From Scyliorhinus canicula (Eukaryota), in assembly GCF_902713615.1 (NCBI RefSeq), contig NC_052157.1, positions 130,491,425 through 130,555,424 of the forward strand: a DNA stretch of 64,000 bases. The letters run 5' to 3'. Made by a program: the position numbers and the translations under genes. This document shows positions 5,101-64,000 of this stretch, one piece after another (position 1 is the first letter of the stretch; each line of letters begins with the position of its first letter). Under the pieces are notes generated by a model. It searched no databases and had not been told where the DNA came from. It saw only the letters and a program-made list of their open reading frames with translations.

Positions 5101-5596
5101 GAAACCTGTTCTTGGGGGTGGCCCACACTGGGAACCCCCCAGACCTGCCTTTCTGCCTCCAGCTCCTCACAGGGTAACTGCTCAGTTTCTCCCTCACAGA
5201 AAGACAGCAAGTGGCTGCCTTGCCCAATGTCCAGGAACTCAGGAGTAACTTCTTTTGGACAAGGATCTGCGACTAAGGCCAAACAGGAGGATGCCTTTTA
5301 AAACGCACCTGAGACAAGGATGTTACAGGATTCCGCTTCAAAACTTGTTTGATCCAAAAAAAATCCCCTGCTGACCCAACAGAAATAACCCAACCTAATT
5401 TTAGGCAGAAAATGCAAGCAGAACACTGAAAATACTCAGCCTCTGTGAAGAGACAGCAGTTTACATTTCGGGTGGATGGCCCTTGCTTGAATGGTTGATA
5501 AATCAATTGCATACCCACGTTTGTTTTTCCAATAACCTATTACCAAACCCAACACAGCACCAGATGTCTTTTCAAGAAAAATTATCTAATCCTAAT

Positions 5597-7123
5597 ATGG
5601 CGCAGAAAGAAGTCAAAGAAGCATTTATCAGTAACCTAAGTGGCACTACGCTGGCTGAGAATTTATTGGGTTTAATTCTGTCTGCATTATGTGTCACCTG
5701 CCGAGGACTGATATTAATGTACTTTGTTGGACCAAGTGGTGTCTCATCGTGGAAAAGACTCCTGTTGATTGATTTTATTATGCTGGTGGCCTCTCTTGTC
5801 TTGTCCTGCACGGTTTTGTCAGATGTACTTCATTGGGTGGTGCTGGTTCTAGCAGCTGTACTTGTCCTATCTGTGGTTCAGATATACAATCAAAGAAAAC
5901 GGTATTCCCATCAAAACTTAAAAGAAGTCATAGGATCTTTTTATGAAACCAGTTTGGATATGAATTACATTCCCTTTGTCACTTTGTTTCGGGTCTTTGT
6001 TAACATAAAGACTGGCATCAGCATTCTAGCTGTGGACTTTCCAATTTTCCCAAGACGCTATGCTAAAGCTGAAACATATGGGACTGGAATTATGGATTTT
6101 GGAGTGGCAGCTTTCGTTTTTGCAAATGCCCTTGTTTCTCCTGAAGCTCGACAGAGGACCAAAAATATATCACTTTCCAAATTTAGTTTTGTGATTAAAC
6201 AGATCATAGCAGTTTGGCCTTTAGTTTTCTTGGGATTTGCTCGTCTAATAAGCATTAAAGCAGTGGACTATCATGAGCACATATCTGAATATGGTTTACA
6301 TTGGAACTTCTTTTTCACACTGGCAATAGTTAGGATCCTGTCATCTTTTCTTTTGATTTTATGCCCTGTTAGAAGTTCTTGGATCTTGTCAGCGAGCATC
6401 GCCATTGGTTATCAATTGCTTCTTGAAACTACAAATCTGAAGCAATTTATATTGCATGGAAGTGATGGAAAAGACACCAGGATTGGGTTCATTAATGCCA
6501 ACAGAGAAGGACTCTTTTCATTGCTTGGATACTTAGCTGTTTACATGGCTGGTGTACAGACTGGTGTTTACATAATGAAGAAGAGGACATTGGTCGTAGA
6601 CTGGATAAAAGTGCAAGGTTTCCTTTTGATGAGCTTTTTGATATTGTGGCTGCTACTGCATGTGTGTGAGGCTCTCACAGAGCACGTATCTCGCCGGATG
6701 GCCAACCTGAGTTTTGTTTTATGGACAGTCGGGCAGAGTTTGTTCTTTCTGATGATTTACATGCTGGCCGATCTTGTTTTGGTATTTGTCAAAGTTATTT
6801 CAGGGATTTCTAATGTGCCAAGTTCATGGAACATTTTACTAGGTTCTTCCCAACATGAGAAGGATAAGACTTTATTAAAAAACAGTCCTTTCAAAAAGGT
6901 GGATAAAACCACTGTACATTTTTGTCTTATTGAAGCTGTAAGCAGAAACCAACTGCTGTTTTTCCTGCAATCTAACATCTTGACTGGTTTGGTGAATCTT
7001 ATAATAGATACTGTTCACAGTAACTCATTTGTTTCCTTATTTGTAATTGTGCTTTATATGTTCTGTAACTGTTTCATTGTCTACATTTTACACATCAATG
7101 ATATTACTTTAAAGTTTTGGTGA
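5597..7123 (+). CDS. PIGW: GPI inositol acyltransferase PIG-W (GWT1 family), single coding exon, 508 aa
   Basis: Motifs KEAFISNLSGTT, ILAVDFPIFPRRYAKAETYGTGIMDFGV, EYGLHWNFFFT, NANREG, VSRRMANL and terminal KFW match vertebrate PIGW. ATG 5597 (aatATGG) aligns with the orthologous start; an in-frame ATG at 5564 could add 11 aa. Candidate acceptors aacacag/caccag at ~5557-5563. Confidence 0.97.
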   Translation: MAQKEVKEAFISNLSGTTLAENLLGLILSALCVTCRGLILMYFVGPSGVSSWKRLLLIDFIMLVASLVLSCTVLSDVLHWVVLVLAAVLVLSVVQIYNQRKRYSHQNLKEVIGSFYETSLDMNYIPFVTLFRVFVNIKTGISILAVDFPIFPRRYAKAETYGTGIMDFGVAAFVFANALVSPEARQRTKNISLSKFSFVIKQIIAVWPLVFLGFARLISIKAVDYHEHISEYGLHWNFFFTLAIVRILSSFLLILCPVRSSWILSASIAIGYQLLLETTNLKQFILHGSDGKDTRIGFINANREGLFSLLGYLAVYMAGVQTGVYIMKKRTLVVDWIKVQGFLLMSFLILWLLLHVCEALTEHVSRRMANLSFVLWTVGQSLFFLMIYMLADLVLVFVKVISGISNVPSSWNILLGSSQHEKDKTLLKNSPFKKVDKTTVHFCLIEAVSRNQLLFFLQSNILTGLVNLIIDTVHSNSFVSLFVIVLYMFCNCFIVYILHINDITLKFW

Positions 7124-12764: not shown

Positions 12765-14170
12765 TTTATTCTTTCATAGTCTTCACTGGCAAGACTAACA
12801 TCTGTTGGTCATCCTTAATTGCCTTGAGAAAGTGATGGTGAGCTGTCTTCTTGGACCATTGAACTCCACGTGGTACGCATATTCTTGCAGTGCTGTTAGA
12901 AAGGGAGTTCCAGGACTTTGTTCCAGCGATAGTGAAGGAACGGAGATGTAGTTCCAAGTCAGGATGGTGTGTGACTTGGAGGGGAACTTGCAGGTGGTTA
13001 TGTTCCCTTGTGTCTGCTGCCCTCAACTTTATAGTTGGTAGAGGCCATGGGTTTAGGGTTAGCCTCCAGAATTGACCTGGAGTTTGCAGGAATGAAAATC
13101 AATATCCAAGACATTGCTGCGTGTACAATCCTGGAACAAAATCAGCAGGACATTAAAAAAAATTGTTTTTAAAAATATTTTGAACATTTCTGTCTAGCAG
13201 ATAAAAAATATTGAAAATGGTGGGCTAAAAAGGATGATTGGCTGTGCATCACAACGATGGATGTGTTAGCTGCCGAATGCCTGGAGCATTGAGAGGTGCG
13301 GGTGGGGGGCAAGACATGTGATGAAATCTCCAGGAATACGTTCAATCACAGTTGACAAACACAGGTTTGGAAGGAACTGTCAAAGGATTCTCAGTGAGAA
13401 TACTGCTGCTACTTTGCGTCAGTGGTAGAGGGAATTAATGTTCATGTGGTGATGGGGTGCCAATCAAGCAGGCATGCTTTGTCCTTGATCATGTTGAGCT
13501 TCTTAATTTTCCAGGAAAGTGGAGATTATTACCACACTCCAGACTTGTGCCTTGTCAACTATGGACAGGCTTTGGGGTGTGAGGAGATGGCTTACCTGCC
13601 TCAGAATTCCTAGTCTCTGACTTGCTCTTGTAGCCACAGGAGTTGTAGATGGTTGGTCCAATAATGTGACTGGTTCAGTTCAGTTTCTGGTCAATGGTAA
13701 CCCCTAGGATCTTGCTAGTGAGGGATTCAGCGATGGTATTGCCATTGAACATCAAGGGATTCTCTCCTGTTGGAGATACTCATTACCTGGCACTTGTGTG
13801 GCTCAAATTCTACTTGCCACTTATCCGAACAAACCTCATTGTTGTCCAGGTATTGCAGCATATAGACATGGATTCCTTCAGTATCTGGGGAGTTGAAATT
13901 GATACTGAACATTATGCGAACATTCCCATTCTGACCTTCTATTGGAAGGAGGGTAATTGATGCAGCAAATGAAGATGGTTAAGCCTAGGGCACTGTCCTG
14001 AGGAACATTTGCAGAGATGTCTTGGGACTAAAATGATTTGCCTCCAACCAAACCATCTTCCTTTGTGCTAGGTACGACTGCAACCAATGGAGAGTTTTCC
14101 TGTTGATTCTCGTTGACTTCAACTTTGCTCAGATTCCTTGATGTCACACTTGGTCAAATCCTGCCTTGAC
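12765..14170 (-). mobile_element. CR1 LINE ORF2 3' fragment(s)
   Basis: Translations SFTIAGTKSWNSL and DKWQVEFEPHKCQVMSIS are typical of the CR1 RT C-terminus. Confidence 0.8.
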
Positions 14171-14855
14171 TAGAGTGCGACCTGAACAGAGTGCTGGAAG
14201 TTTGGTGAGTTGAGGGAGTTGGTTAGAAGGGGGAGGATGTGTTCCTTTGCTTTTATAAAAACTTTTTCACCCTGTAGGAATTGGTTCTGACACTACTGTA
14301 AGGCAAAGAAGGTAGCTGTTTAGTGAATATCTGGTAAGTGATTAAGGTCTATTCTATTTCTAAGTTTTAAAATAGCACAGGAACTGGTGGTAAGTTTAAT
14401 GAATTGCATAAAATGAAAATAAGTATTTGAATAAAATAATTAAGTCGATGATTAAAATGCTTTCTGAATGGCTGGATCCGTGATAAGTCTCAGCTGCAGC
14501 TTTTGGGAGCTCCTGAATGCCATTGTGATTCAGGACAAACAAGTCTGTGGGAAAAGTTTAAGGCTCAAGAAACTTCAGCTCAGATTCATTTGAGCTGGAG
14601 GCTGAGCCGCAGAGACTGCAACACATCAGGGAGGGGGAAAGTTATCTGGACTCTTTGCACCAGGAGCTGGTCACACAACGTAGGATAAGATCGTCTGATC
14701 CGGAGCGGCTGTGGCGGTAGCAGCAGTTTGTCAGGCAGAGTCTGCTTTAAAGGCCTCATCATGACCGAGACCAGCTTCCCGTCCACCAGCGGGGACTGAA
14801 TATTGTTCTAAATCTGTGTCTTGCCCTGAGCCAGTATTTCACCCACCTGTGAGCA

Positions 14856-15650
14856 ATGAATTTTGAAGAGGATTTGATGCCCAGGCAATTGCCTGTGGAT
14901 GACTGGGATACCATTGAAGACTTTGACCCTAGTGTGCCACCCAGAACACCCCAAGAATACTTGAAAAGAGTCCAGATTGAAGCATCAAGATGTCCTGAAG
15001 TAGTAGTGGCAAAGATTAACCCAAAAAAGTTGAAAATGAATCAGACTGTGAATATTTCACTATCTGGATGTCAACCTGCCCCTGCCGGATATTCTCCCAG
15101 TCTCCGATGGCAGCAGCAGCAAGTAGCTAATTTTTCAATCCTTCGACAGAGTATAGCTAAACACAGGGAGCATTGGAAGTCTCAGCCCTTGGACAATAAC
15201 GTCATGCTGCCAACACTTAATGATGAAGAAGGATGGAAAAAGTTCTGTCTTGGACAAAAATTGTACTTGGGTTCATCTGTATTACCAATCATGAATGAGC
15301 CCGATAACCCAGGCATTGACTACATTCAGGTGGGACTTCCTCCTTTGTTGAGTATTGTCAGCAGAATGAGTCAGCCCACTGTATTTAACACCCTGGAATA
15401 TCTAATTATCTGGTTTGGAGATAAAAAGTTATATCCAGAATTAGGCAGATGGTTATATGCATTGTTAGCCTGCATAGAGAAGCCATTGCTACCTGAGGCT
15501 CATTCTCTTAATCGACAACTGGCTAGAAGATGTTCAGTGGTTCGTGCTAAGCTAGAAAGTCCAGAAGATACAGAATTGCCAGCAGTGAATTTGCTGATTT
15601 GTTTAGTTGCCAGGTATTTTGAACAGAGTGACCTCGCAGATAATGACTGA
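14856..15650 (+). CDS. GEMIN2: Gemin2 (SMN-interacting protein 1), open 264-aa ORF within the retrocopy
   Basis: [86 protein letters not shown] match vertebrate GEMIN2 end to end. Confidence 0.92.
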
Positions 15651-15841
15651 TGTGGTTTACAGTCTGGACTAAGAATTCTAGCTATAATTTTCAACATTGT
15701 TTATTTTAGCACCTTTACTTTTTTTTCTGGCACAAACTTAATATCTTTAATTTTTTTGAGGATATTAAACCATCTTGCAGGAGAATATTTAGGTCTGTGA
15801 GATGAAATGAATTAAAGATTAAAACCTAATTGTGTCAAGTA

Positions 15842-16076
15842 AAGGGCAGCACGGTGGCCTAGTGGTTAGCACAACCGCCTCACGGCGCTGAGGTCCCAGG
15901 TTGGATCCCGGCTCTGGGTCACTGTCTGTGCGGAGTTTGCACATTCTCCCCGTGTCTGCGTGGGTTTCGCCCCCACAACCCAAAAATGTGCAGAGTAGGT
16001 GGATTGGCCATGCTAAATTGCCCCTTAATTGGAAAAAATAATTGGCTAATCTAAATTTTTAAAAAAATAAAATAAA
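15842..16076 (+). mobile_element. Short-form V-SINE in the GEMIN2 retrocopy 3'UTR
   Basis: 14-bp TSD aattgtgtcaagta at 15828-15841 and 16077-16090; A-rich tail. Confidence 0.93.
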
Positions 16077-17971
16077 AATTGTGTCAAGTAGCTTTGTTTT
16101 AAATAAATCATTTGACTATTATTGAAAAAAAAAGATCGTCTGATCTGGAAAGTGGTTACAGGTAAGGGGACCCAGAGGGCAGGAGTCGCAGCCTCTGCAA
16201 TTGTCCAACAGGTTTGAGGTTCCTTCAGCTTGTTTGGGTGAGACTGGAGGGCTGCAGGATGGATGAGCTGACTGACCATGGCACAGTGGTACAGGGAGCC
16301 ATCCAAGTGAGGGAAGCAAAATGGAATATAGTGGTAGTATCGTGGAGGATTGACACTGTTCGCTGCAGCAAAGAGCGAGAGTCCAGAAGAATATGTTGGC
16401 TGTCTGGTTGCCAGGATTTGGGACATCTGCTCAGGGCTGGGGAGGAAATTGCAGTTGGAGAGGGAGAGGATCCAGTTGCCGTGGTCCACGTAGCTACCAA
16501 CAACGTAGGCAGGATGAGGAAGGAGGTATTGCATAATCAGTATGAGGAGCTCGGCAAGAAATTAAGCAGAACCTCAAACGTAACAATTTCTAGATTATTA
16601 CCTGAGCCACGTGCAAATTGGCGTAATGTAAAGGACACTGCTGATTGTAAATGCCAAGCTGTTCAAATCCCAAAAGGGAAACTTGAAACAACTACTTTCA
16701 ACTGTGTATGCAATTTGTGTAGTATGAGAGGTTTACAATCTAGAAAATGATGTCCCCATCTCTTTGATGATTTTAATAAAGTAAATATTTATTAAGAAAT
16801 AGAACAAACAACAATTATGTAAACCAGAAGTACACTGAATTAAGATTATGGCTTTACACAGTAACACTACTTTAAACAGATCCAAACAATCTTAATTACC
16901 TTCAGCTATAACTCTCCCCAATCTGTTCCACAACAACTTTCACGCAATTCAGCGGAGTTGAGTTAAAGTCCATTGAATGGCATGTTTAGCGGGATGTTTC
17001 TCAGCGCCTGTAGCACCAAGAAACATCCCACTATTCAACGGCACTTTGCTGCTTTTTGACCTCGGAGATTCTCTCCGCCGAGGCCGCACTTAGATCGGGG
17101 CGGCATCTTGTCTAGCTGCCTTGATCTCCCCCCCTTTCACCCCCATTTTTGCCCCCAACCCCTTATACCCTCCTAACCTTGGGAAGGGTCCTGGGAACTC
17201 CCCTCACACCTCTCTACCTGGTAAGGTTGCTCTCCCCCCCCCCCCCCCACCCCCGGACCGGATCCCTGGCAGTGCCAAACTTGCACCTGAGCACTCTGGC
17301 ATTTCCAGCCTGGCAGTGTCATCTGGGCACCCTGTAATTGACAGGAGGGAGAGCCAGGGTGCCACCCTGCCCTGTCCTCAACCATGGCCTCAGGAACCCC
17401 CCCCCCCCCCCTCCCGCCCAGGTGCCGTTACGACTGGTCCATGTTTGTGTGGACAAATACTAAATGGCACCCTGGCGAGGTCCCCCAGGCACAGCCATTG
17501 AGTCCCGGGCGCTGGGTGAATCCTACAAACGTATATTTAAATGAGCCATACGGCCTCGTCCTGACACCAAGTCGGGTGTGCCAATGCCGCTGAATCGTGC
17601 CCTTTATAGCTTTTAAAATCTATAAACATCCAGCCACTGTTACCACACGGAGCTTTTTTTTTGTTTCTTGGGGTTGCTTCTGAGGTAAATCCCCAGCTTA
17701 CTTTTCAAATCAGGCTTCATTCACACACACACTGCTTTCCGAGGGGTAAATAGCTACTCCTGCTGTTGGCTGAGATCTAAAAAAAAAACAGCCCCCTACA
17801 GTTTTCTGTATCCCCTTAAATATGTTTTTTTCTTTTTGATCTCTTCCTTATCTGATCTACATTCTTTAGAACTGCCTTGAACCAGACTTAATTGCCTTCA
17901 TCACTTTATTTTAGATTTTTGAGTTTAAAAGCTAAATAAACTCACCTTGCTTCTCTTCCTTTGAATCCTTA

Positions 17972-29206: not shown

Positions 29207-32200
29207 TGTCGTAAACCACTGTAGTGTATAATATGTGTATTGTGGTAAATGGCCACTGTATTATATGAAATGTGGTCAACTACTGCCCGATGGCTCCGCC
29301 TCCCCTCGAGCCCGGTATAAAGGTGCTGGTCTCCGCCTCTGCCCCAGTTCGGGATCTGAGGCCAGGAGTCTTTCTGTTTAGTTTATTAAAGTCTCAGTTA
29401 CGTTCACCACTCGTCGTGTGTTCATTGATGGCATATCTTATTTAATAAACTAAACCTCTAAGATGAATTCATCACTCAAGCCTGATTGCATGGAGCTGAA
29501 CCCACAGGCAGCCGATGCCACTGCAACATTCGAGCACTGGCTAAGCTGCTTCGAAGCTTACCTCGGATCCTTCACCGGAGACTTCACTGACCTCCAAAAG
29601 AAGCAGATCCTCCACGCAAGGGTGAGCCCGCAAGTCTTTCTTCTCATCAGGGACTCCCCCTCATATACGGAGGCGATAATGCTGCTGAAGGGACAATATG
29701 TAAAGTCTGTAAACGAGGTGTATGCTAGGCACCTTCTTGCCACAGACGACAATGCCCTGGCTAGGAATCACTAGCAGAATTCCTGCGTGCCTTGCGGGTA
29801 CACTGCCGGAACTGTGACTGGGTTATCGGCTACCCAACACGTGGAGCTGTTGATTAGGGACGCTTATGTCGCAGGCATGAAGCCAAACTACATCCACCAG
29901 CGATTGCTAGAAGGGGGTACACTCGGCCTCCCAGAGACAGTGCAGCTCTCAAACTCACTGGAGATGGCCTTCCAGAACATGGAGGCCTACACCTCCGACC
30001 GTGCGGCACCCTCGTGGACCTAGTGGGCGCCGTCATCGTCCAACCCGGGTGCGGTGCAAGCCTGTGCCGCGCAGCAGCCCGCCAATGCTGGAAGCCCAAA
30101 GTGCCTCTTTTGCGGCCAGGGTAATCATCCCAGACAACGCTGCCCTGCACGGAACACAATGGGTGTTGCAATGGGTGTGGGAGGAAGGGCCACTTTGCGA
30201 AAGCCTGCCAGGCCCGATCTCTCCCTACAGCTTCTAGGCCCAGCAGCACTGCCTGCTGCCTGTCGGGGCCGCTCCCAGCTGGGGGCGCCACCCGCCATGT
30301 GCGACCCGTGGGTGCCGCCATCTTTAACGCCATCTTGTACTCCACCCGCCACGCGCGACCCATGGGGGCTGCCATCTTGGGACCACTTTGCAGCCTCCCG
30401 GTAGACCTGTTCACCCGATCGTACGCTGGCTGTCGCTACCTCCGACTGGCCTACCCATCACCTTCCAAGGCTCGCCTCCATCACGTTCGACCAGTCCCGG
30501 CCTCATCACCTCACAAAATCTACGAAGACCGTCTGGATCAAAGGGCATGAGATGGCCTGTCTTTACGACTCCAGGAGCACAGACAGCTTTATACACCCAG
30601 ATACGGTAAGGCGCTGCTCCCTCCCAATTTTACCCGCGACCCAGAAAATCTCCCTGGCTTCCGGATCCCATGCAGTAGAAATTGGGGGTACTTTGTCGCG
30701 ACCCTTAATGTACAAGGCGTAGAGTACGCTAACTTCAAACTCTACGTCCTTCCCCATCTCTGCACTGCCCTATTACTGGGGCTCGACTTCCAGTGCCACC
30801 TCCAAAGCCTTACTTTAAAGTTTGGTGGACCCCTGCCCCCCCACTCACCGTCCGTAGCCTCGTGACCCATAAGGTCGCCCCACCCTCCCTCTTCGCTAAC
30901 CTCACCCCGGACTGTAAGCCCATCGCTACTAGGAGCAGACGATACAGTGCCCGGGACAGGACCTTTATCAGGTGGGAGGTCCAGCGATTCCTGCGAAAGG
31001 GGATCATTGAGGCTAGTACCATCCCCTGGAGAGTCCAACTGGTGGTCGTCAAGACTGGGGAGAAGCACCGGATGGGCATCGACTACAGTCAGACCATCAA
31101 CCTGTACACGCAGCTCGATGCGTAGCCCCTCCCCCGCATATCTGACATGGTCAACCAGATTGTGCAGTATCGAGTCTTCTTCACAGTTGACTTGAAGTCC
31201 GCATACCACCAGCTCCCTATCTGCCCGGAGGACCACCAATTCACTGCCTTCGAGGCAGATGGGTGCCTCTACCACTTCCTCAGGGTTCCCTTCAGCGTCA
31301 CCAATCAGGTCTCAGTCTTCCAACGAGAAATGGACTGAATGGTTGCCCAGTACGGGCTGCGGGCCACGTTCCCGTACTTAGATAACATCACCATCTGCGG
31401 CCATGACCAGCAGGACCATGAGGAAAACCTCCAGCACTTCCTCCACACCACTAAACTCCTGAACCTACAGTAAGGAAAAATGCGTTTTCCGTACAACCCG
31501 CCAAGCCATCCTTGGCTATGTTGTGGAAAACGATCCTATGGCCCGACCCCAACCGCATGCACCCCCTCCTGGAACTCCCCCTCCCCCCTGCCCCAAGGAC
31601 CTGAAGAGATGCCTGGGGTTCTTCTCTTACTATACCCAGTGGGTCCCAATTATGTGGACAAGGCCCGTCCACTTATTAAATCCACCATTTTTCCCCTGAC
31701 GGCTGAGGCCCGTCTGGCCTTCAACCGCATCAAGGCAGATATTGCCAAAGCCGCAATGCACTCTGTGAACAAATCCATTCCGTTCCAGGTGGAGAATCAG
31801 GCGGGCAGGCCCGTGGCTTTCTTCTCCTGTACCCTCCATGCCTCCGGAATTCGACAGTCCTCCGTCGAAAAGGAAGCCCAAACCATTGTGGAAGCTGTGC
31901 GACATTGGAGGCATTACCTGGCTGGCAGGTGATTCACTCTCCTCACTGACCAACGGTCAGTTGCCTTCATGTTTAACAATACACAGCGGGGCAAGATCAA
32001 GAACAAGATTCTGAGGTGGAGGATCGAGCTCTCCACCTACAACTATGATATCGTGTATCAACTCGGGAAGCTCAATGAGCCCCCAGATGCCCTATCCCGC
32101 GGTACATGTGCCAGCGCACAAGTAGACTGACTTCGGGCCCTCCACAATGACCTCTGTCACCCAGGTTCACCCGTTTTTTTCACTTTATCACAACTTTCAA

Positions 32201-34177: not shown

Positions 34178-35977
34178 GGATCCTCCCCTTCCAAGTTGAA
34201 AGCAATGCATCAGACGTCGCTCTGGCCGCCACCCTCAACCAGGCAGGCAGGCCCGTGGCATTCTTTTCACGCACCCTCCATGCCTCCGAAATTTGGCACT
34301 CCTCCGTCGAGAAGGAGGCCCAAGCCACCGTAGAAGCTGTGCGGCATTGGAGGCATCACCTAGCCGGTATGAGATTCACTTTCTTCACTGACCGACGGTC
34401 GGTTGCCTTCATGTTCAATAACACACAGTGGGGCAAGATCAAAAATGATAAAATCTTGAGGTGGAGGATCGAGCTCTCCACCTTTAACTACGAGATTTTG
34501 TATCGCCCCGGTAAGCTCAACGAGCCCCCCGATGCCCTATCCCGAGGTACATGCGCCAGCGCACAAGTGGACCTACTCCGGACCCTACACGGGTCACCCG
34601 GTTCTTTCACTTCATAAAGGCCCGCAATCTGCCCTACTCCATTGAGGAGGTCAGGGCTATCACCAGAGACCGCCAGGTCTGCTCGGAGTGCAAACCACAC
34701 TTCTACCGGCCAGACCGAGCGCTCCTAGTGAAGGCCTACCGCCCCTTTGAACGCCTCAGCGTGGATTTCAAAGGGCACCTCCCCTCCACCGACCGAAACA
34801 CGCACTTCCGTAACGTGGTCGACGAATATTCCAGATTCCTCTTCGCTGTCCCATTCCCGATATGACGTCTGCCACCGTCATCAAAGCACTCAAAACCATC
34901 TTCGCCCTGTTCGGTTTCCCCGCCAACATCAACAGCGACCGGGGATCCTTCTTTATCAGTGATGAGCTGCATCAGTACCTGCTCAGCAAGGGCATTGCCT
35001 TGAGCAGGACGACCAGCTACAACCCCCGGAGAAACAGGCAGGTGAAGAGGGCGAACGGGACAATCTGGAAGGCCGTCCAGCTGGCCCTACGGTCCAAAAG
35101 TCTCCCAGTCTCCCACTGGCAGGAGGTCCTCCCTGACGTCCTTCACTCCATCCGATCGCTACTTTGCACTGCAACTAATGCAACCCCCCATGAACGTCTC
35201 CTTGCCTTCCCCAGGAAGTCCACCTCCGGGGTTTTGCTCCCAACGTGGCTGACAGCTCCAGGACCCGTTCTCCTCCGCAAGCACGTGCGGCTCCACAAGG
35301 TGGACCCGTTGGTCGAGTGGGTACAGCTACTCCATGCAAACCCGCAGTACGCTTATGTAGCGTACCCCTTCGGCCACCAAGACACAGTCTCCCTCAGGGA
35401 CCTGGCACCAGCTGGTTCCCCACCCCCGCCCCCCATCTGCCCGGGCACTATCCTTCCTTCCCCCAAGCGCACCTCACCACAGCCCCCGCTCCAGGATGAT
35501 CCGTCCTCCCCTTGGTCCCACCTGGGGATGAAGATGAGGTCTAAAAGCTCCCGGAGTCACCGGCGACCGAGCCGGCATCTGCATCGCCACCGGGACTGCG
35601 GCGCTCACAACGGAGGATCAAGGCACCCGACTGGCTGAATTTGTGAACTTTCCCCAAAATGTACACTTTAAAATGCTCACATACATGTAACTAGTTTTTC
35701 CACCACCCCCGCTGGACTCTTTTTTAACAGGGGGTGAATGTGGTAGTCACCACTGTTTGTACATATCACATACATGAGATGTAATACGGTAAGGCTCCTG
35801 TACTACAGGTGCAGGGTAGATTCCTGCCTGCTGGCTTCGCCCAGTAGGCGGAGTATAAATGTGTGTGCTCACCGAGCTTCAGCCATTTCGGCAGCAGCTG
35901 CAGGAGGCTATACATCTCTGCTTAATAAAGCCTCGATTACACTCTGCTATCGTCTCATCATAATTGATAGTGCCTCA
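34178..35977 (+). mobile_element. Gypsy LTR retrotransposon B, 5'-truncated: RNase H, integrase, PPT, 3' LTR 35739-35977
   Basis: FQVESNASDVALAATLNQAGRPVAFFSRTL; integrase core SDRGSFF..RTTSYNPR.N.QVKRANG; PPT aacagggggtgaa 35726-35738; LTR TG...CA with TATAAA and AATAAA 35924-35929. Confidence 0.9.
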
Positions 35978-61836: not shown

Positions 61837-64000
61837 TACTACTGTTCCCTCTGCCATAAAAAGACTATCTCTTAATCATTTGGTGAATTCAGAATTATAA
61901 ATGTTCTCCGCAGTGAATGTAAACCTAATGTGCTTCTGTTAAAAGGTGTTTTCTTTTGTCTTCTGGATGTTGTTTGGGAAGTTATTAAGGATTACTTAGT
62001 GTTGTATTATTTGGGGGTTGTATTTGAATTGATGGTTGCTAAGATGTTCACTGTATGGTTTTTAAAAAGGTTAACTTGAGTTCATAGAATAAACATTGTT
62101 TTGTTTTAAACAAATGCTTTTCCATTTCTGCTGTACCGCACGTGTTGAGTGAGCCGTGTGCTCCCCATACCACCATACCACAATCTATTAAAAGTTGTGT
62201 GTCAGGTGAACTATAGAATTTACAGTGCAGAAGGATGCTATTCAGCACATCGAGTCTGCACCGGCCCTTGGAAAGGGCACCCCACCCCAAGCCCACACCT
62301 CCATGTTCTCTAAACCCTTGCTCATAACAAGTGGAGAGTATTCCATTACACTCCTGGAATGTGCCTTGAAGATGGTGGAGAGGCCCTGCAGAGTCGGGAT
62401 GCGAGTTATACTCTTGGAGGATTCCTAACCTCTGACCTGCTCGTGTAGCCACAGTAGTTATATGGCTTGTCCACTACTATGTCTGGTCAATGGTAACCCC
62501 CAGGATGTTGATAGTTAGGAATTCAGCAATAGTAATGACGTTGTGTGTCTCTGTTTGAAATGGTTATTGCCTGCACTTGTGTGACATAAATGTTACTTGC
62601 CTCTTACTGCACATGAATATAGGTTTCTTCAGTGTCTGAGTAGTCATTAATCGTACTGAACATTGTGTGATCATCAATGAACATCTTCACTTTCGATATT
62701 CTGATGGCGGAGGTCGGGGGTGGCATGTTATGGGGGGGGGGGGGGGGGAAGATCATTGAAGCAGGTGAAGACAGCTGGGCCTCAGACAGGGACTCCTGCA
62801 GTGATGCTCTGAAACGGAGGTGATACTTTCACAGCAATTTGTGTAGTGCCTTTAATGTCAGAAAATATTCCAAGGCACTTCATGTGAGTAAAACGGCAGT
62901 GAGCCATCAGAAATGGGGCAAAGGTGTCGTCAGAGGCAAGTTCATTTTTTAAATATTTCATTTAAAAAATATATAGCATTTTTTATACAGCTTTTTAAAA
63001 AAAAAATATAGCAGAAGGCAATGAAAAAGTTTGAGGAAGGAATTCCAGATTGTGACCAAGGCATCTTAAAGTTGTCGATGATGAGTTGAATAAAATTTGA
63101 GATGCTAGTGTTGGAAAGGAGCTGTTGCAGCTGGAGAGAGCACAGAAGTGGGGAAGGGCAAGGCCATAAAGGAATTTGTAAACCGCATGAGAGTTTAAGT
63201 TTACACAGTTTGGAGTCAGCAGGCATGAGGGTGATGGTTCAGCAAGGTCTCGTACAAATTTGCAGAGGGTTGGAGGCAAATTGAAATAGTCATCTAGAGA
63301 TAACCATGGAAGTGATGCGGGTTTCAGCAGAAGATGGGTTAAGGCTGTGGCGGAGCCAGGGGCAATGTTAAGAGGATAGAAATGTAGCCTAAGTTATGTA
63401 TATTGGGTTGGATACTCATCACCGGATCACATTGAGCACCGGCTGGTTCAGCGGCGAATAATTGCAGTCCCGAAAGACTGTTTGGTGAATTGGACATCTA
63501 GAATTGTTCCCTCAGTGCACCCAAACAAGTGCCAGAGTGTGGCGACTAGGGGATTTTCGCAGTAACTTCATTGCAGTGTTAATGTAAGCCTACTTATGAC
63601 ACAGATTATTATTATTATTATTGTTATTGTTGTAATGGATGGGGTTGGCGGCTAGGGAACAAAACTTGTGGCAGGGACCAACGGCAACAGCTTCAGTTTT
63701 CCCAATATTTAATTGTAGGAAATTTCTGCTCATCCAATACTGGTGTCAGAAAAGTAGTGTGATAAGTTATCAAGAGAGGTTGTTGCGAGGGGCTGGACTG
63801 CAGGATTGGGTAGAAAAGCCCATGTGTTGATGCTGTGGCTGGATAGATGATAACGGAACCAGATGAGTGCAATCCACCCAGCTGGATAACGGGTGTGGTT
63901 TTGGAGGAGGATGGTGATCAACTGTCAAGGGCAGTAAATGCATCAAAATATGAAGAGGGATGGTTTATCTTTGTCACAGTAATATTGGAAACAGTACGAT

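What the first reader, a model, noticed from the sequence alone, without database searches (positions are those of the whole stretch)
14687..16145. Full-length GEMIN2 retrocopy with an intact ORF and perfect TSD inside a CR1 ORF1
Seen: intronless 264-aa ORF, CpG-retaining 5'UTR, 3'UTR, AATAAA, A-tail and a perfect 14-bp TSD. The insertion is in sense orientation ~500 bp downstream of a CR1 5' region that could supply a promoter. Known: vertebrate GEMIN2 (SMN complex) is multi-exon and not part of this synteny block, and poly(A) plus a ~14-bp TSD is the L1 retroposition signature. Inference: recent L1-type retroposition of a cellular mRNA in a shark, giving either a nascent retrogene or a young pseudogene. 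HSLNRQ instead of the conserved HSLIRQ hints at relaxed constraint.
Basis: partly seen in the sequence, partly recalled or inferred. Interest (0 to 1): 0.7.

Follow-up and report, generated by a model that had tools for sequence, protein, structure and literature searches.

The report
Processed GEMIN2 retrocopy in catshark
This is an intron-free copy of the snRNP-assembly gene GEMIN2 that was reverse-transcribed from its mRNA into a decayed LINE in the small-spotted catshark; its reading frame is still open, but its protein is changing faster than a constrained gene should, so it is an ordinary processed retrocopy and most likely a young pseudogene.

Summary
Window 14687-16145 (Scyliorhinus canicula, GCA_902713615.2) holds a full-length GEMIN2 cDNA. 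It has a 155-nt 5'UTR and a 264-aa SIP1/Gemin2 ORF (14856-15650). All nine introns of the shark gene are absent. The 3'UTR runs to the conserved AATAAA, followed by 7-9 A. A perfect 14-bp target-site duplication (TSD) bounds the insert. It sits inside a decayed esterase-type LINE ORF1, 7.7 kb downstream of PIGW.

New here:
- The 3'UTR carries a later SINE with its own 14-bp TSD; that site is empty in Chiloscyllium.
- The exact protein is already an NCBI/UniRef gene model.
- The copy has 9-10 lineage-specific replacements against 2 in S. torazame GEMIN2. Three of them hit positions at least 99% conserved in 116 vertebrate orthologues.
- Its ML end branch is 5.6 times longer than that of S. torazame.

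These results point to relaxed constraint. About 14 neutral changes leave the frame free of stop codons half the time, so an open frame is weak evidence of function.

CR1 as opposed to L2 is not shown. The scan has noted other retrocopies in this genome. Low interest.

The parts
14687..14700 (+). 5' copy of the target-site duplication AAGATCGTCTGATC
   Evidence: Identical to 16132-16145. The target context GGAT/AAGA gives a bottom-strand nick site CTT/AT, loosely like the L1 endonuclease TTTT/AA site (inference).
14701..14855 (+). 5'UTR of the retroposed GEMIN2 mRNA. It holds a 12-codon uORF (14761-14799) and an in-frame TGA two codons before the ATG.
   Evidence: Sequence. Six CpG, observed/expected 0.51. 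It does not align to the Chiloscyllium exon that holds the ATG beyond about 4 nt upstream of it, as expected for a separate non-coding first exon (inference).
14856..15650 (+). Intact intronless GEMIN2 ORF, 264 aa plus stop
   Evidence: The exact protein is in NCBI/UniRef/nr as a single 795-bp CDS. It is 95.5% identical to S. torazame GEMIN2 X2. Nine parental intron positions are fused.
15651..15841 (+). Proximal 3'UTR, up to and including the first copy of the SINE's TSD (15828-15841)
   Evidence: Aligns colinearly with the Chiloscyllium 3'UTR.
15842..16076 (+). tRNA-derived SINE with an A-rich tail, inserted in the 3'UTR and flanked by AATTGTGTCAAGTA (15828-15841 and 16077-16090)
   Evidence: One search found the 14-bp direct repeat. 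The Chiloscyllium 3'UTR runs across the site without the SINE. The tRNA-derived call comes from reading the 5' end and was not tested.
16077..16124 (+). Distal 3'UTR with the poly(A) signal AATAAA at 16102-16107; the cleavage site lies 17 nt after it
   Evidence: The signal and the spacing are conserved in Chiloscyllium.
16125..16133 (+). Remnant poly(A) tail: 9 A, the last two shared with the TSD
16132..16145 (+). 3' copy of the target-site duplication
14468..14686 (+). Host element, left part: start of a decayed LINE ORF1 (ATG at 14468, Cys-rich N-terminus, coiled-coil-like stretch) with stops and frameshifts
   Evidence: Three-frame reading of the rebuilt empty site. The reading ...QELVTQRRIRSSD | PKWLQVRG... 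runs on across the insertion point. The resemblance to LINE ORF1 architecture is from memory.
16146..16640 (+). Host element, right part: esterase (SGNH-like) domain of the same LINE ORF1. The element ends near 16640 and no RT follows.
   Evidence: ORF 16214-16750 matches PDB 4c1b 'ORF1-encoded protein' around the HVxTN motif at E 0.027. Atlas nearest clusters are SGNH/GDSL esterases of chordates, score 0.93. No Pfam hit and no protein hit at 1e-5.

Best explanation
A spliced, polyadenylated GEMIN2 mRNA of the Scyliorhinus lineage was copied into the genome by target-primed reverse transcription, using a LINE with relaxed poly(A) recognition (L1 type). The endonuclease nicked the bottom strand at CTT/AT. 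The poly(A) tail primed cDNA synthesis, and the staggered second nick gave the 14-bp duplication. The insertion split the ORF1 of an older, already decaying esterase-type LINE, 7.7 kb downstream of PIGW. Since then the copy has gathered about ten amino-acid replacements with no regard to conservation, has lost most of its A-tail, and carries a SINE in its 3'UTR. It is most likely a processed pseudogene, or at best a copy under weak constraint, whose frame is still open by chance. NCBI's pipeline calls it a protein-coding gene because the frame is open.

Shown: the cDNA origin, the TSD, the host LINE and the accelerated protein change.

Inferred: the L1-type enzyme, the lack of function and the existence of the parent.
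For: - cDNA structure: nine intron positions of the 10-exon Chiloscyllium gene are fused. The full 3'UTR reaches the conserved AATAAA and is followed by an A run. The TSD is a perfect 14 bp. The LINE ORF1 reading runs on across the rebuilt empty site.
- Non-syntenic place: the neighbour is PIGW/GWT1.
- Relaxed constraint: 9 private replacements against 2 in S. torazame with Mustelus, Chiloscyllium or Hemiscyllium as outgroup, chi2 4.45, p 0.035. D55N, F161L and I219N hit columns at least 99% conserved in 116 orthologues, with residues never seen there. Only 1 of 116 orthologues has as many private changes of this kind, and the mean is 0.27. Three of ten changes at such columns matches the 23-41% of columns that are that conserved, as expected if changes fall at random. 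The ML end branch is 0.038 against 0.0068 for S. torazame.
- An open frame is weak evidence: with about 14 random substitutions the frame stays free of stops in about 51% of simulations.
- Background: L1 mobilises mRNAs through poly(A), whereas CR1/L2-type LINEs need their own 3' end (PMC3747384).
Against: - The frame is intact over 264 codons, with no indel. Once indels are counted I estimate 0.1-0.25 probability under neutrality; this estimate is mine and was not simulated.
- The exact binomial form of the rate test is only p 0.065, and it weakens with Heptranchias or Stegostoma as outgroup.
- Some of the ten replacements may lie in the S. canicula parental gene itself, which I could not see.
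- Eighteen transcriptome-sized runs from 7 studies hold 0.67-0.72 of the copy's 31-mers. This could mean the copy itself is transcribed.
- Branch-specific dN/dS could not be computed. The pairwise omega against Chiloscyllium is 0.116, but it mostly reflects shared history as a working gene.
Confidence: 0.6

Rival explanations
1. It is a working retrogene: the same retroposition event, but the copy is transcribed (from the LINE 5' region upstream, a nearby CpG-rich stretch or read-through) and makes a Gemin2 paralogue. That paralogue would be under weaker or shifted selection, for example in the germ line.
For: - Intact 264-codon frame with start, stop and no indel.
- Full 5'UTR with CpG observed/expected 0.51.
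- Sense orientation, 230 bp downstream of the LINE ORF1 start.
- NCBI models it as a protein-coding gene.
- RNA-sized runs hold about 0.7 of its 31-mers.
- Six of the ten replacements put in residues that other vertebrates use at that position.
Against: - Three replacements hit near-invariant, structurally ordered positions: human D72, F176 and I234, which lie within the modelled segments of 5XJL.
- The end branch is 5.6 times longer than that of S. torazame.
- The host LINE is decayed, so a working promoter is doubtful.
- The 0.72 ceiling of shared words is what a parental mRNA differing at about 10-12 sites would give: 0.76 if only the ten replacement sites differ.
- The exact protein is on no Logan contig in the collection. 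This is weak evidence, because the S. torazame X2 isoform also gave no record, and isoforms other than a gene's longest are not kept.
Confidence: 0.27
2. Replacement: S. canicula has lost the multi-exon GEMIN2, and this retrocopy is now its only GEMIN2 gene.
For: - I could not retrieve any S. canicula multi-exon GEMIN2. Fourteen members of the 90% cluster stayed hidden.
- Many RNA-sized runs hold most of the copy's words.
Against: - GEMIN2 is a conserved core SMN-complex gene, from established knowledge of the snRNP assembly pathway. A sole copy would be expected to stay under strong purifying selection. This one instead has three changes at positions invariant across vertebrates and a long branch.
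- If this were the only copy, RNA and DNA runs should hold nearly all of its words. They plateau at 0.72-0.77 across 7 studies.
- All other sharks examined keep the multi-exon gene.
Confidence: 0.08
3. Artefact: cDNA contamination or a mis-assembly put a GEMIN2 transcript into the contig.
For: None specific.
Against: - The perfect TSD and the host LINE ORF1 that runs on across the empty site are marks of true integration.
- The protein differs from that of the closest shark at 12 positions.
- A SINE with its own TSD lies inside.
- DNA-sized runs from at least two samples and two studies hold 0.65-0.77 of the words.
Confidence: 0.02

Closest known systems
L1-mediated processed pseudogenes and retrocopies of vertebrate mRNAs
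   Same: A full-length spliced mRNA copy with all introns removed, ending at the native poly(A) site, with an A-tail, a 14-bp TSD and an A-starting target site, at a new locus without the parental promoter (mechanism as reviewed in PMC3747384).
   Different: The host is a shark, where CR1/L2-type LINEs are the common kind (my own knowledge) and the responsible L1-type element was not identified here. The A-tail is only 7-9 nt. The frame is still open.
Vertebrate GEMIN2 (SIP1; Pfam PF04938; human structures 5XJL and 2LEH)
   Same: Matches the whole family profile. The alignment with human Gemin2 covers residues 5-263. In the tree it is sister to S. torazame GEMIN2 with 99/97 support.
   Different: It has no introns and sits at a different locus. 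Three replacements (D55N, F161L, I219N) fall at positions at least 99% conserved in 116 orthologues.
Esterase-type ORF1 of CR1/L2-group LINEs (zebrafish ZfL2-1 ORF1p esterase, PDB 4C1B)
   Same: The flanking ORF carries the HVxTN(D/N) block and matches 4c1b over 51 residues. Atlas neighbours are SGNH esterases of chordates.
   Different: The match is weak (E 0.027). The copy has stops and frameshifts and gives no Pfam or protein-database hit. No RT is present to tell CR1 from L2.

Membership tests
Processed (L1-type) retrocopy | All parental introns are absent, at exact exon-exon joints | tested here: met
   Nine GT/AG intron positions of the Chiloscyllium gene map to unbroken sequence in the window.
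Processed (L1-type) retrocopy | Ends at the mRNA's own polyadenylation site, followed by an A-tail | tested here: met
   AATAAA at 16102-16107 aligns with the Chiloscyllium signal. An A run of 9 starts 17 nt later. The tail is short.
Processed (L1-type) retrocopy | Target-site duplication flanks the insert, and the host sequence runs on once the insert is removed | tested here: met
   14/14 TSD. The LINE ORF1 reading continues across the rebuilt empty site.
Processed (L1-type) retrocopy | An intron-containing parental gene lies elsewhere in the same genome | not testable with these tools
Other sharks have the multi-exon gene.
Processed (L1-type) retrocopy | Made by an L1-clade reverse transcriptase active in this lineage | not tested
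   Inferred from the poly(A) plus TSD signature and from PMC3747384. The ORFs I scanned with Pfam held no L1 domain, but that scan covered only a few ORFs of the window.
Functional retrogene | Intact reading frame | tested here: met
   264 codons, no stop, no indel against orthologues.
Functional retrogene | Purifying selection on the copy's own branch | tested here: inconclusive
   Branch dN/dS cannot be computed without the parental or S. torazame CDS. Protein-level tests point the other way: 9 against 2 replacements (p 0.035, or 0.065 by the exact test), 3 hits at near-invariant columns, and an end branch 5.6 times longer.
Functional retrogene | Transcription of the copy itself, shown by copy-specific bases in RNA | not testable with these tools
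The word shares of 0.67-0.72 in RNA-sized runs cannot separate copy from parent.
Gemin2/SIP1 (PF04938) | Full-length match to the family profile | tested here: met
   E 4.8e-60, profile positions 2-215 of 215. Human Gemin2 chains match at E 3.6e-122.
Gemin2/SIP1 (PF04938) | Keeps the residues that are invariant in vertebrate orthologues | tested here: not met
   D55N and F161L fall at columns that are 100% conserved, and I219N at a 99% column. The new residues are never seen in 116 orthologues.
CR1 LINE (host element) | ORF1 with an esterase domain, as in CR1/L2-group LINEs | tested here: inconclusive
   Weak match to PDB 4c1b (E 0.027). Atlas neighbours are SGNH esterase clusters at 0.93. No Pfam hit.
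CR1 LINE (host element) | RT domain that groups with the CR1 clade | not testable with these tools
   The fragment ends near 16640 with no ORF2, and the window holds no other copy.

The most novel reading that the evidence does not exclude
The copy is a transcribed, translated Gemin2 paralogue, a shark retrogene born by L1-type retroposition and driven from the 5' end of a CR1/L2-type LINE. Its changes at otherwise invariant Gemin2 positions would reflect a shifted or dominant-interfering role in Sm-core assembly. In the extreme case, it has replaced the multi-exon parent.
Probability: 0.15. Interest if true: 0.45.

Novelty: new member of a known kind. Interest (0 to 1): 0.2.

Why it matters
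It is a clean, datable example showing that mRNA retroposition of the L1 type (poly(A) plus a 14-bp TSD) has operated in the catshark lineage. The SINE inside it carries the same signature, an A-rich tail and a 14-bp TSD. It also shows that an open-frame retrocopy is filed as a protein-coding gene in the public annotation, although its protein shows signs of decay. That matters for gene counts and orthology calls in shark genomes. Beyond that it is an ordinary retrocopy. It would become interesting only if copy-specific transcripts and purifying selection were shown.

Tried and rejected
Local BLAST used the pieces beside them or masked them.
- Parent in S. canicula: two cluster listings showed the same 15 of 29 members. 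A search with the C-terminal 115 aa, meant to surface partial shark proteins, found only other vertebrates and some exon-bearing ORFs that resemble the human sequence. The scan's own notes hold nothing, by word or by sequence.
- CDS of closer sharks: S. torazame X2 and Mustelus X3 are not on record. The Mustelus X1 locus comes without DNA. Only Chiloscyllium gave DNA, so branch dN/dS was not possible.
- Papers: searches for GEMIN2 retrogenes, for catshark retrocopies and for 'gem-associated protein 2-like' found nothing on sharks.
- LINE clade: no protein homologues at 1e-5, and no second copy in the window.
- Rejected: cDNA contamination or mis-assembly, because of the TSD, the host sequence that runs on across the site, and the internal SINE.
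- Rejected as evidence of function: the pairwise omega of 0.116 against Chiloscyllium, because dS of 0.44 is almost all shared history.
- Rejected as evidence of silence: the absence of the exact protein from Logan contigs. The look-up of the S. torazame X2 isoform also found nothing, though only a gene's longest product is kept.
Full report
WHAT IS THERE

The window comes from Scyliorhinus canicula, assembly GCA_902713615.2, on a 165-Mb contig. Between 14687 and 16145 lies a complete GEMIN2 cDNA on the + strand. Its parts, in order, are:
- 5' TSD AAGATCGTCTGATC at 14687-14700.
- 5'UTR at 14701-14855, with a 12-codon uORF at 14761-14799 and an in-frame TGA two codons before the ATG.
- ORF at 14856-15650, 264 aa.
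- 3'UTR at 15651-16124, interrupted by a 235-bp SINE at 15842-16076.
- AATAAA at 16102-16107.
- An A run of nine at 16125-16133.
- The 3' TSD at 16132-16145.

The three bases after each TSD copy are CGG and TGG. The duplication may therefore have been 17 bp, with one CpG decayed since.

The ORF matches Pfam SIP1/Gemin2 over the whole profile (E 4.8e-60) and matches human Gemin2 chains of PDB 5XJL at E 3.6e-122.

IS IT A RETROCOPY?

Yes. The Chiloscyllium punctatum GEMIN2 gene could be fetched with its introns (L001). I rebuilt its 264-aa CDS from 10 exons with canonical GT/AG borders, spread over about 33 kb. The Mustelus asterias gene spans 42 kb. The window sequence aligns to all ten exons in order. 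The nine intron positions fall at window 14974, 15059, 15149, 15209, 15329, 15374, 15443, 15554 and 15613, where the sequence is unbroken.

With the SINE taken out, the 3'UTR aligns colinearly with the Chiloscyllium 3'UTR, through the SINE insertion site and the AATAAA, down to the cleavage region. The copy therefore ends at the gene's own poly(A) site.

Removing the TSD-bounded segment restores a continuous reading of the host element (...QELVTQRRIRSSD | PKWLQVRG...).

The locus is not the GEMIN2 neighbourhood. The only other gene called within 10 kb is a single-exon PIGW/GWT1 gene at 5564-7123. The window holds no second GEMIN2-like stretch.

Together these features are the standard marks of target-primed reverse transcription of a cellular mRNA by a LINE that recognises poly(A), that is, the L1 type. 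CR1/L2-type LINEs need their own 3' end (PMC3747384). The enzyme itself was not identified. That step is inference.

THE HOST ELEMENT

The flanks read as a LINE ORF1. An ATG at 14468 is followed by a Cys-rich start and a coiled-coil-like stretch on the left. On the right is an esterase-like domain (16214-16750) with the HVATNN block. Three results bear on its identity:
- It gives a weak match to PDB 4c1b, 'ORF1-encoded protein' (E 0.027).
- Its nearest ESM-Atlas clusters are SGNH/GDSL esterases of chordates (0.93).
- It has stops and frameshifts, no Pfam hit and no protein-database hit at 1e-5, and it stops near 16640 without an ORF2.

'Esterase-type ORF1 of the CR1/L2 group' is therefore reasonable. 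'CR1' is not shown. A working promoter in this decayed copy is speculation.

GENE OR PSEUDOGENE?

The exact protein is already in NCBI nr and UniRef, as a single-exon CDS. The public annotation thus treats it as a gene.

Its closest listed relative is S. torazame GEMIN2 X2, with 95.5% identity and 12 differences. I placed those differences using other sharks as outgroups. Nine or ten are private to the catshark copy: D55N, F79Y, D122N, V157I, F161L, I219N, A228V, N235S, S242P and probably A179T. Two are private to S. torazame.

- Tajima's relative-rate test gives chi2 4.45, p 0.035 (exact binomial 0.065) with Mustelus, Chiloscyllium or Hemiscyllium as outgroup. It is weaker with Heptranchias or Stegostoma.
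- In an ML tree the copy is sister to S. torazame (99/97), with an end branch of 0.038 against 0.0068.
- D55N, F161L and I219N fall in columns that are 100%, 100% and 99% conserved in 116 vertebrate orthologues, and the new residues are never seen there. Only one of the 116 other sequences has three or more private changes of that kind. The mean is 0.27.
- These three positions correspond to human D72, F176 and I234, all inside the ordered parts of the 5XJL model.
- Three of ten changes at near-invariant columns is about what random placement predicts, since 23% of columns are invariant and 41% are at least 95% conserved. It is not what a constrained gene shows.

An open frame says little. Ten replacements imply about 14 substitutions in the CDS if evolution was neutral, and simulated neutral change leaves the frame free of stops about half the time. 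Allowing for indels, I estimate 0.1-0.25; this figure is my own and was not simulated.

The pairwise omega against Chiloscyllium is 0.116 (dS 0.44). That figure measures the long shared history as a working gene, not the copy's own branch.

WHAT COULD NOT BE SETTLED

No reads were seen, and those letters were kept out of every later search.

The S. canicula parental gene could not be retrieved, and no CDS of a close relative was available. Branch dN/dS is therefore missing.

The run index shows that 18 transcriptome-sized runs from 7 studies hold 0.67-0.72 of the 31-mers of 14702-15840, with a sharp ceiling at 0.72. DNA-sized runs hold 0.65-0.77 of the whole stretch. If the RNA runs held only a parental mRNA that differs from the copy at just the ten replacement sites, the share would be 0.76. 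With a full neutral complement of silent and UTR changes it would be 0.46-0.65. The ceiling therefore fits 'the parent is expressed and differs at about 10-12 sites', and it speaks against 'this is the only GEMIN2'. It is indirect, though, and does not exclude transcription of the copy.

AGE

The replacements, the perfect 14-bp TSD with a possible single CpG decay next to it, six CpGs kept in the 5'UTR (observed/expected 0.51 against 0.23 in the flank) and the shrunken A-tail all fit about 1-1.5% neutral divergence. The copy is not brand-new but young.

The SINE in the 3'UTR has a perfect 14-bp TSD and is absent from Chiloscyllium. Whether it entered the parental 3'UTR before retroposition or the copy afterwards is open.

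VERDICT

This is a textbook processed retrocopy, most likely a young pseudogene with a still-open frame (0.6). A weakly constrained retrogene is the main rival (0.27), and replacement of the parent is a long shot (0.08). The scan has noted other retrocopies in this genome (SYCP1 and TPR), which fits ongoing or recent mRNA retroposition in the catshark. Interest is low.

Noticed in passing
window 15842-16076 (TSD copies at 15828-15841 and 16077-16090): A SINE that reads as tRNA-derived, with an A-rich tail and a perfect 14-bp TSD (AATTGTGTCAAGTA), sits in the retrocopy's 3'UTR. Its target site also starts with AA after a T, like the GEMIN2 insertion, so the same L1-type machinery may move this SINE family. 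Similar SINE tails lie in two Chiloscyllium GEMIN2 introns (L001 7798-7843 and 12889-12939).
   Followed up: partly
window 5483-7123 (+); NCBI CDS 5564-7123: Intact single-exon PIGW/GWT1 gene (Pfam GWT1, E 8e-132; NCBI product 519 aa), 7.7 kb upstream of the retrocopy on the same strand.
   Followed up: partly
window 14761-14799: A 12-codon upstream ORF (MTETSFPSTSGD*) in the retroposed 5'UTR. S. torazame isoforms X1/X3 are predicted with a 23-aa N-terminal extension read from the matching first exon (P0003). That extension may be a read-through of the 5'UTR and not real coding sequence.
   Followed up: no
window 34862-35638 (+): ORF with a partial integrase core domain (rve, E 2.2e-07), probably part of the Gypsy-type element that another first-reader note places near 29316-29465.
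   Followed up: no
window 13603-13823 and 62418-62606: A 220-bp stretch just upstream of the LINE fragment recurs at 69% identity near the end of the window. It is an unnamed dispersed repeat.
   Followed up: no
window 16640-16790: The LINE ORF1 fragment breaks off near 16640 and runs into AT-rich sequence with an AATAAA-like signal (…ttttaataaagtaaatatttatt…). A 5'-only LINE fragment is unusual, so there may have been a later deletion or another insertion here.
   Followed up: no
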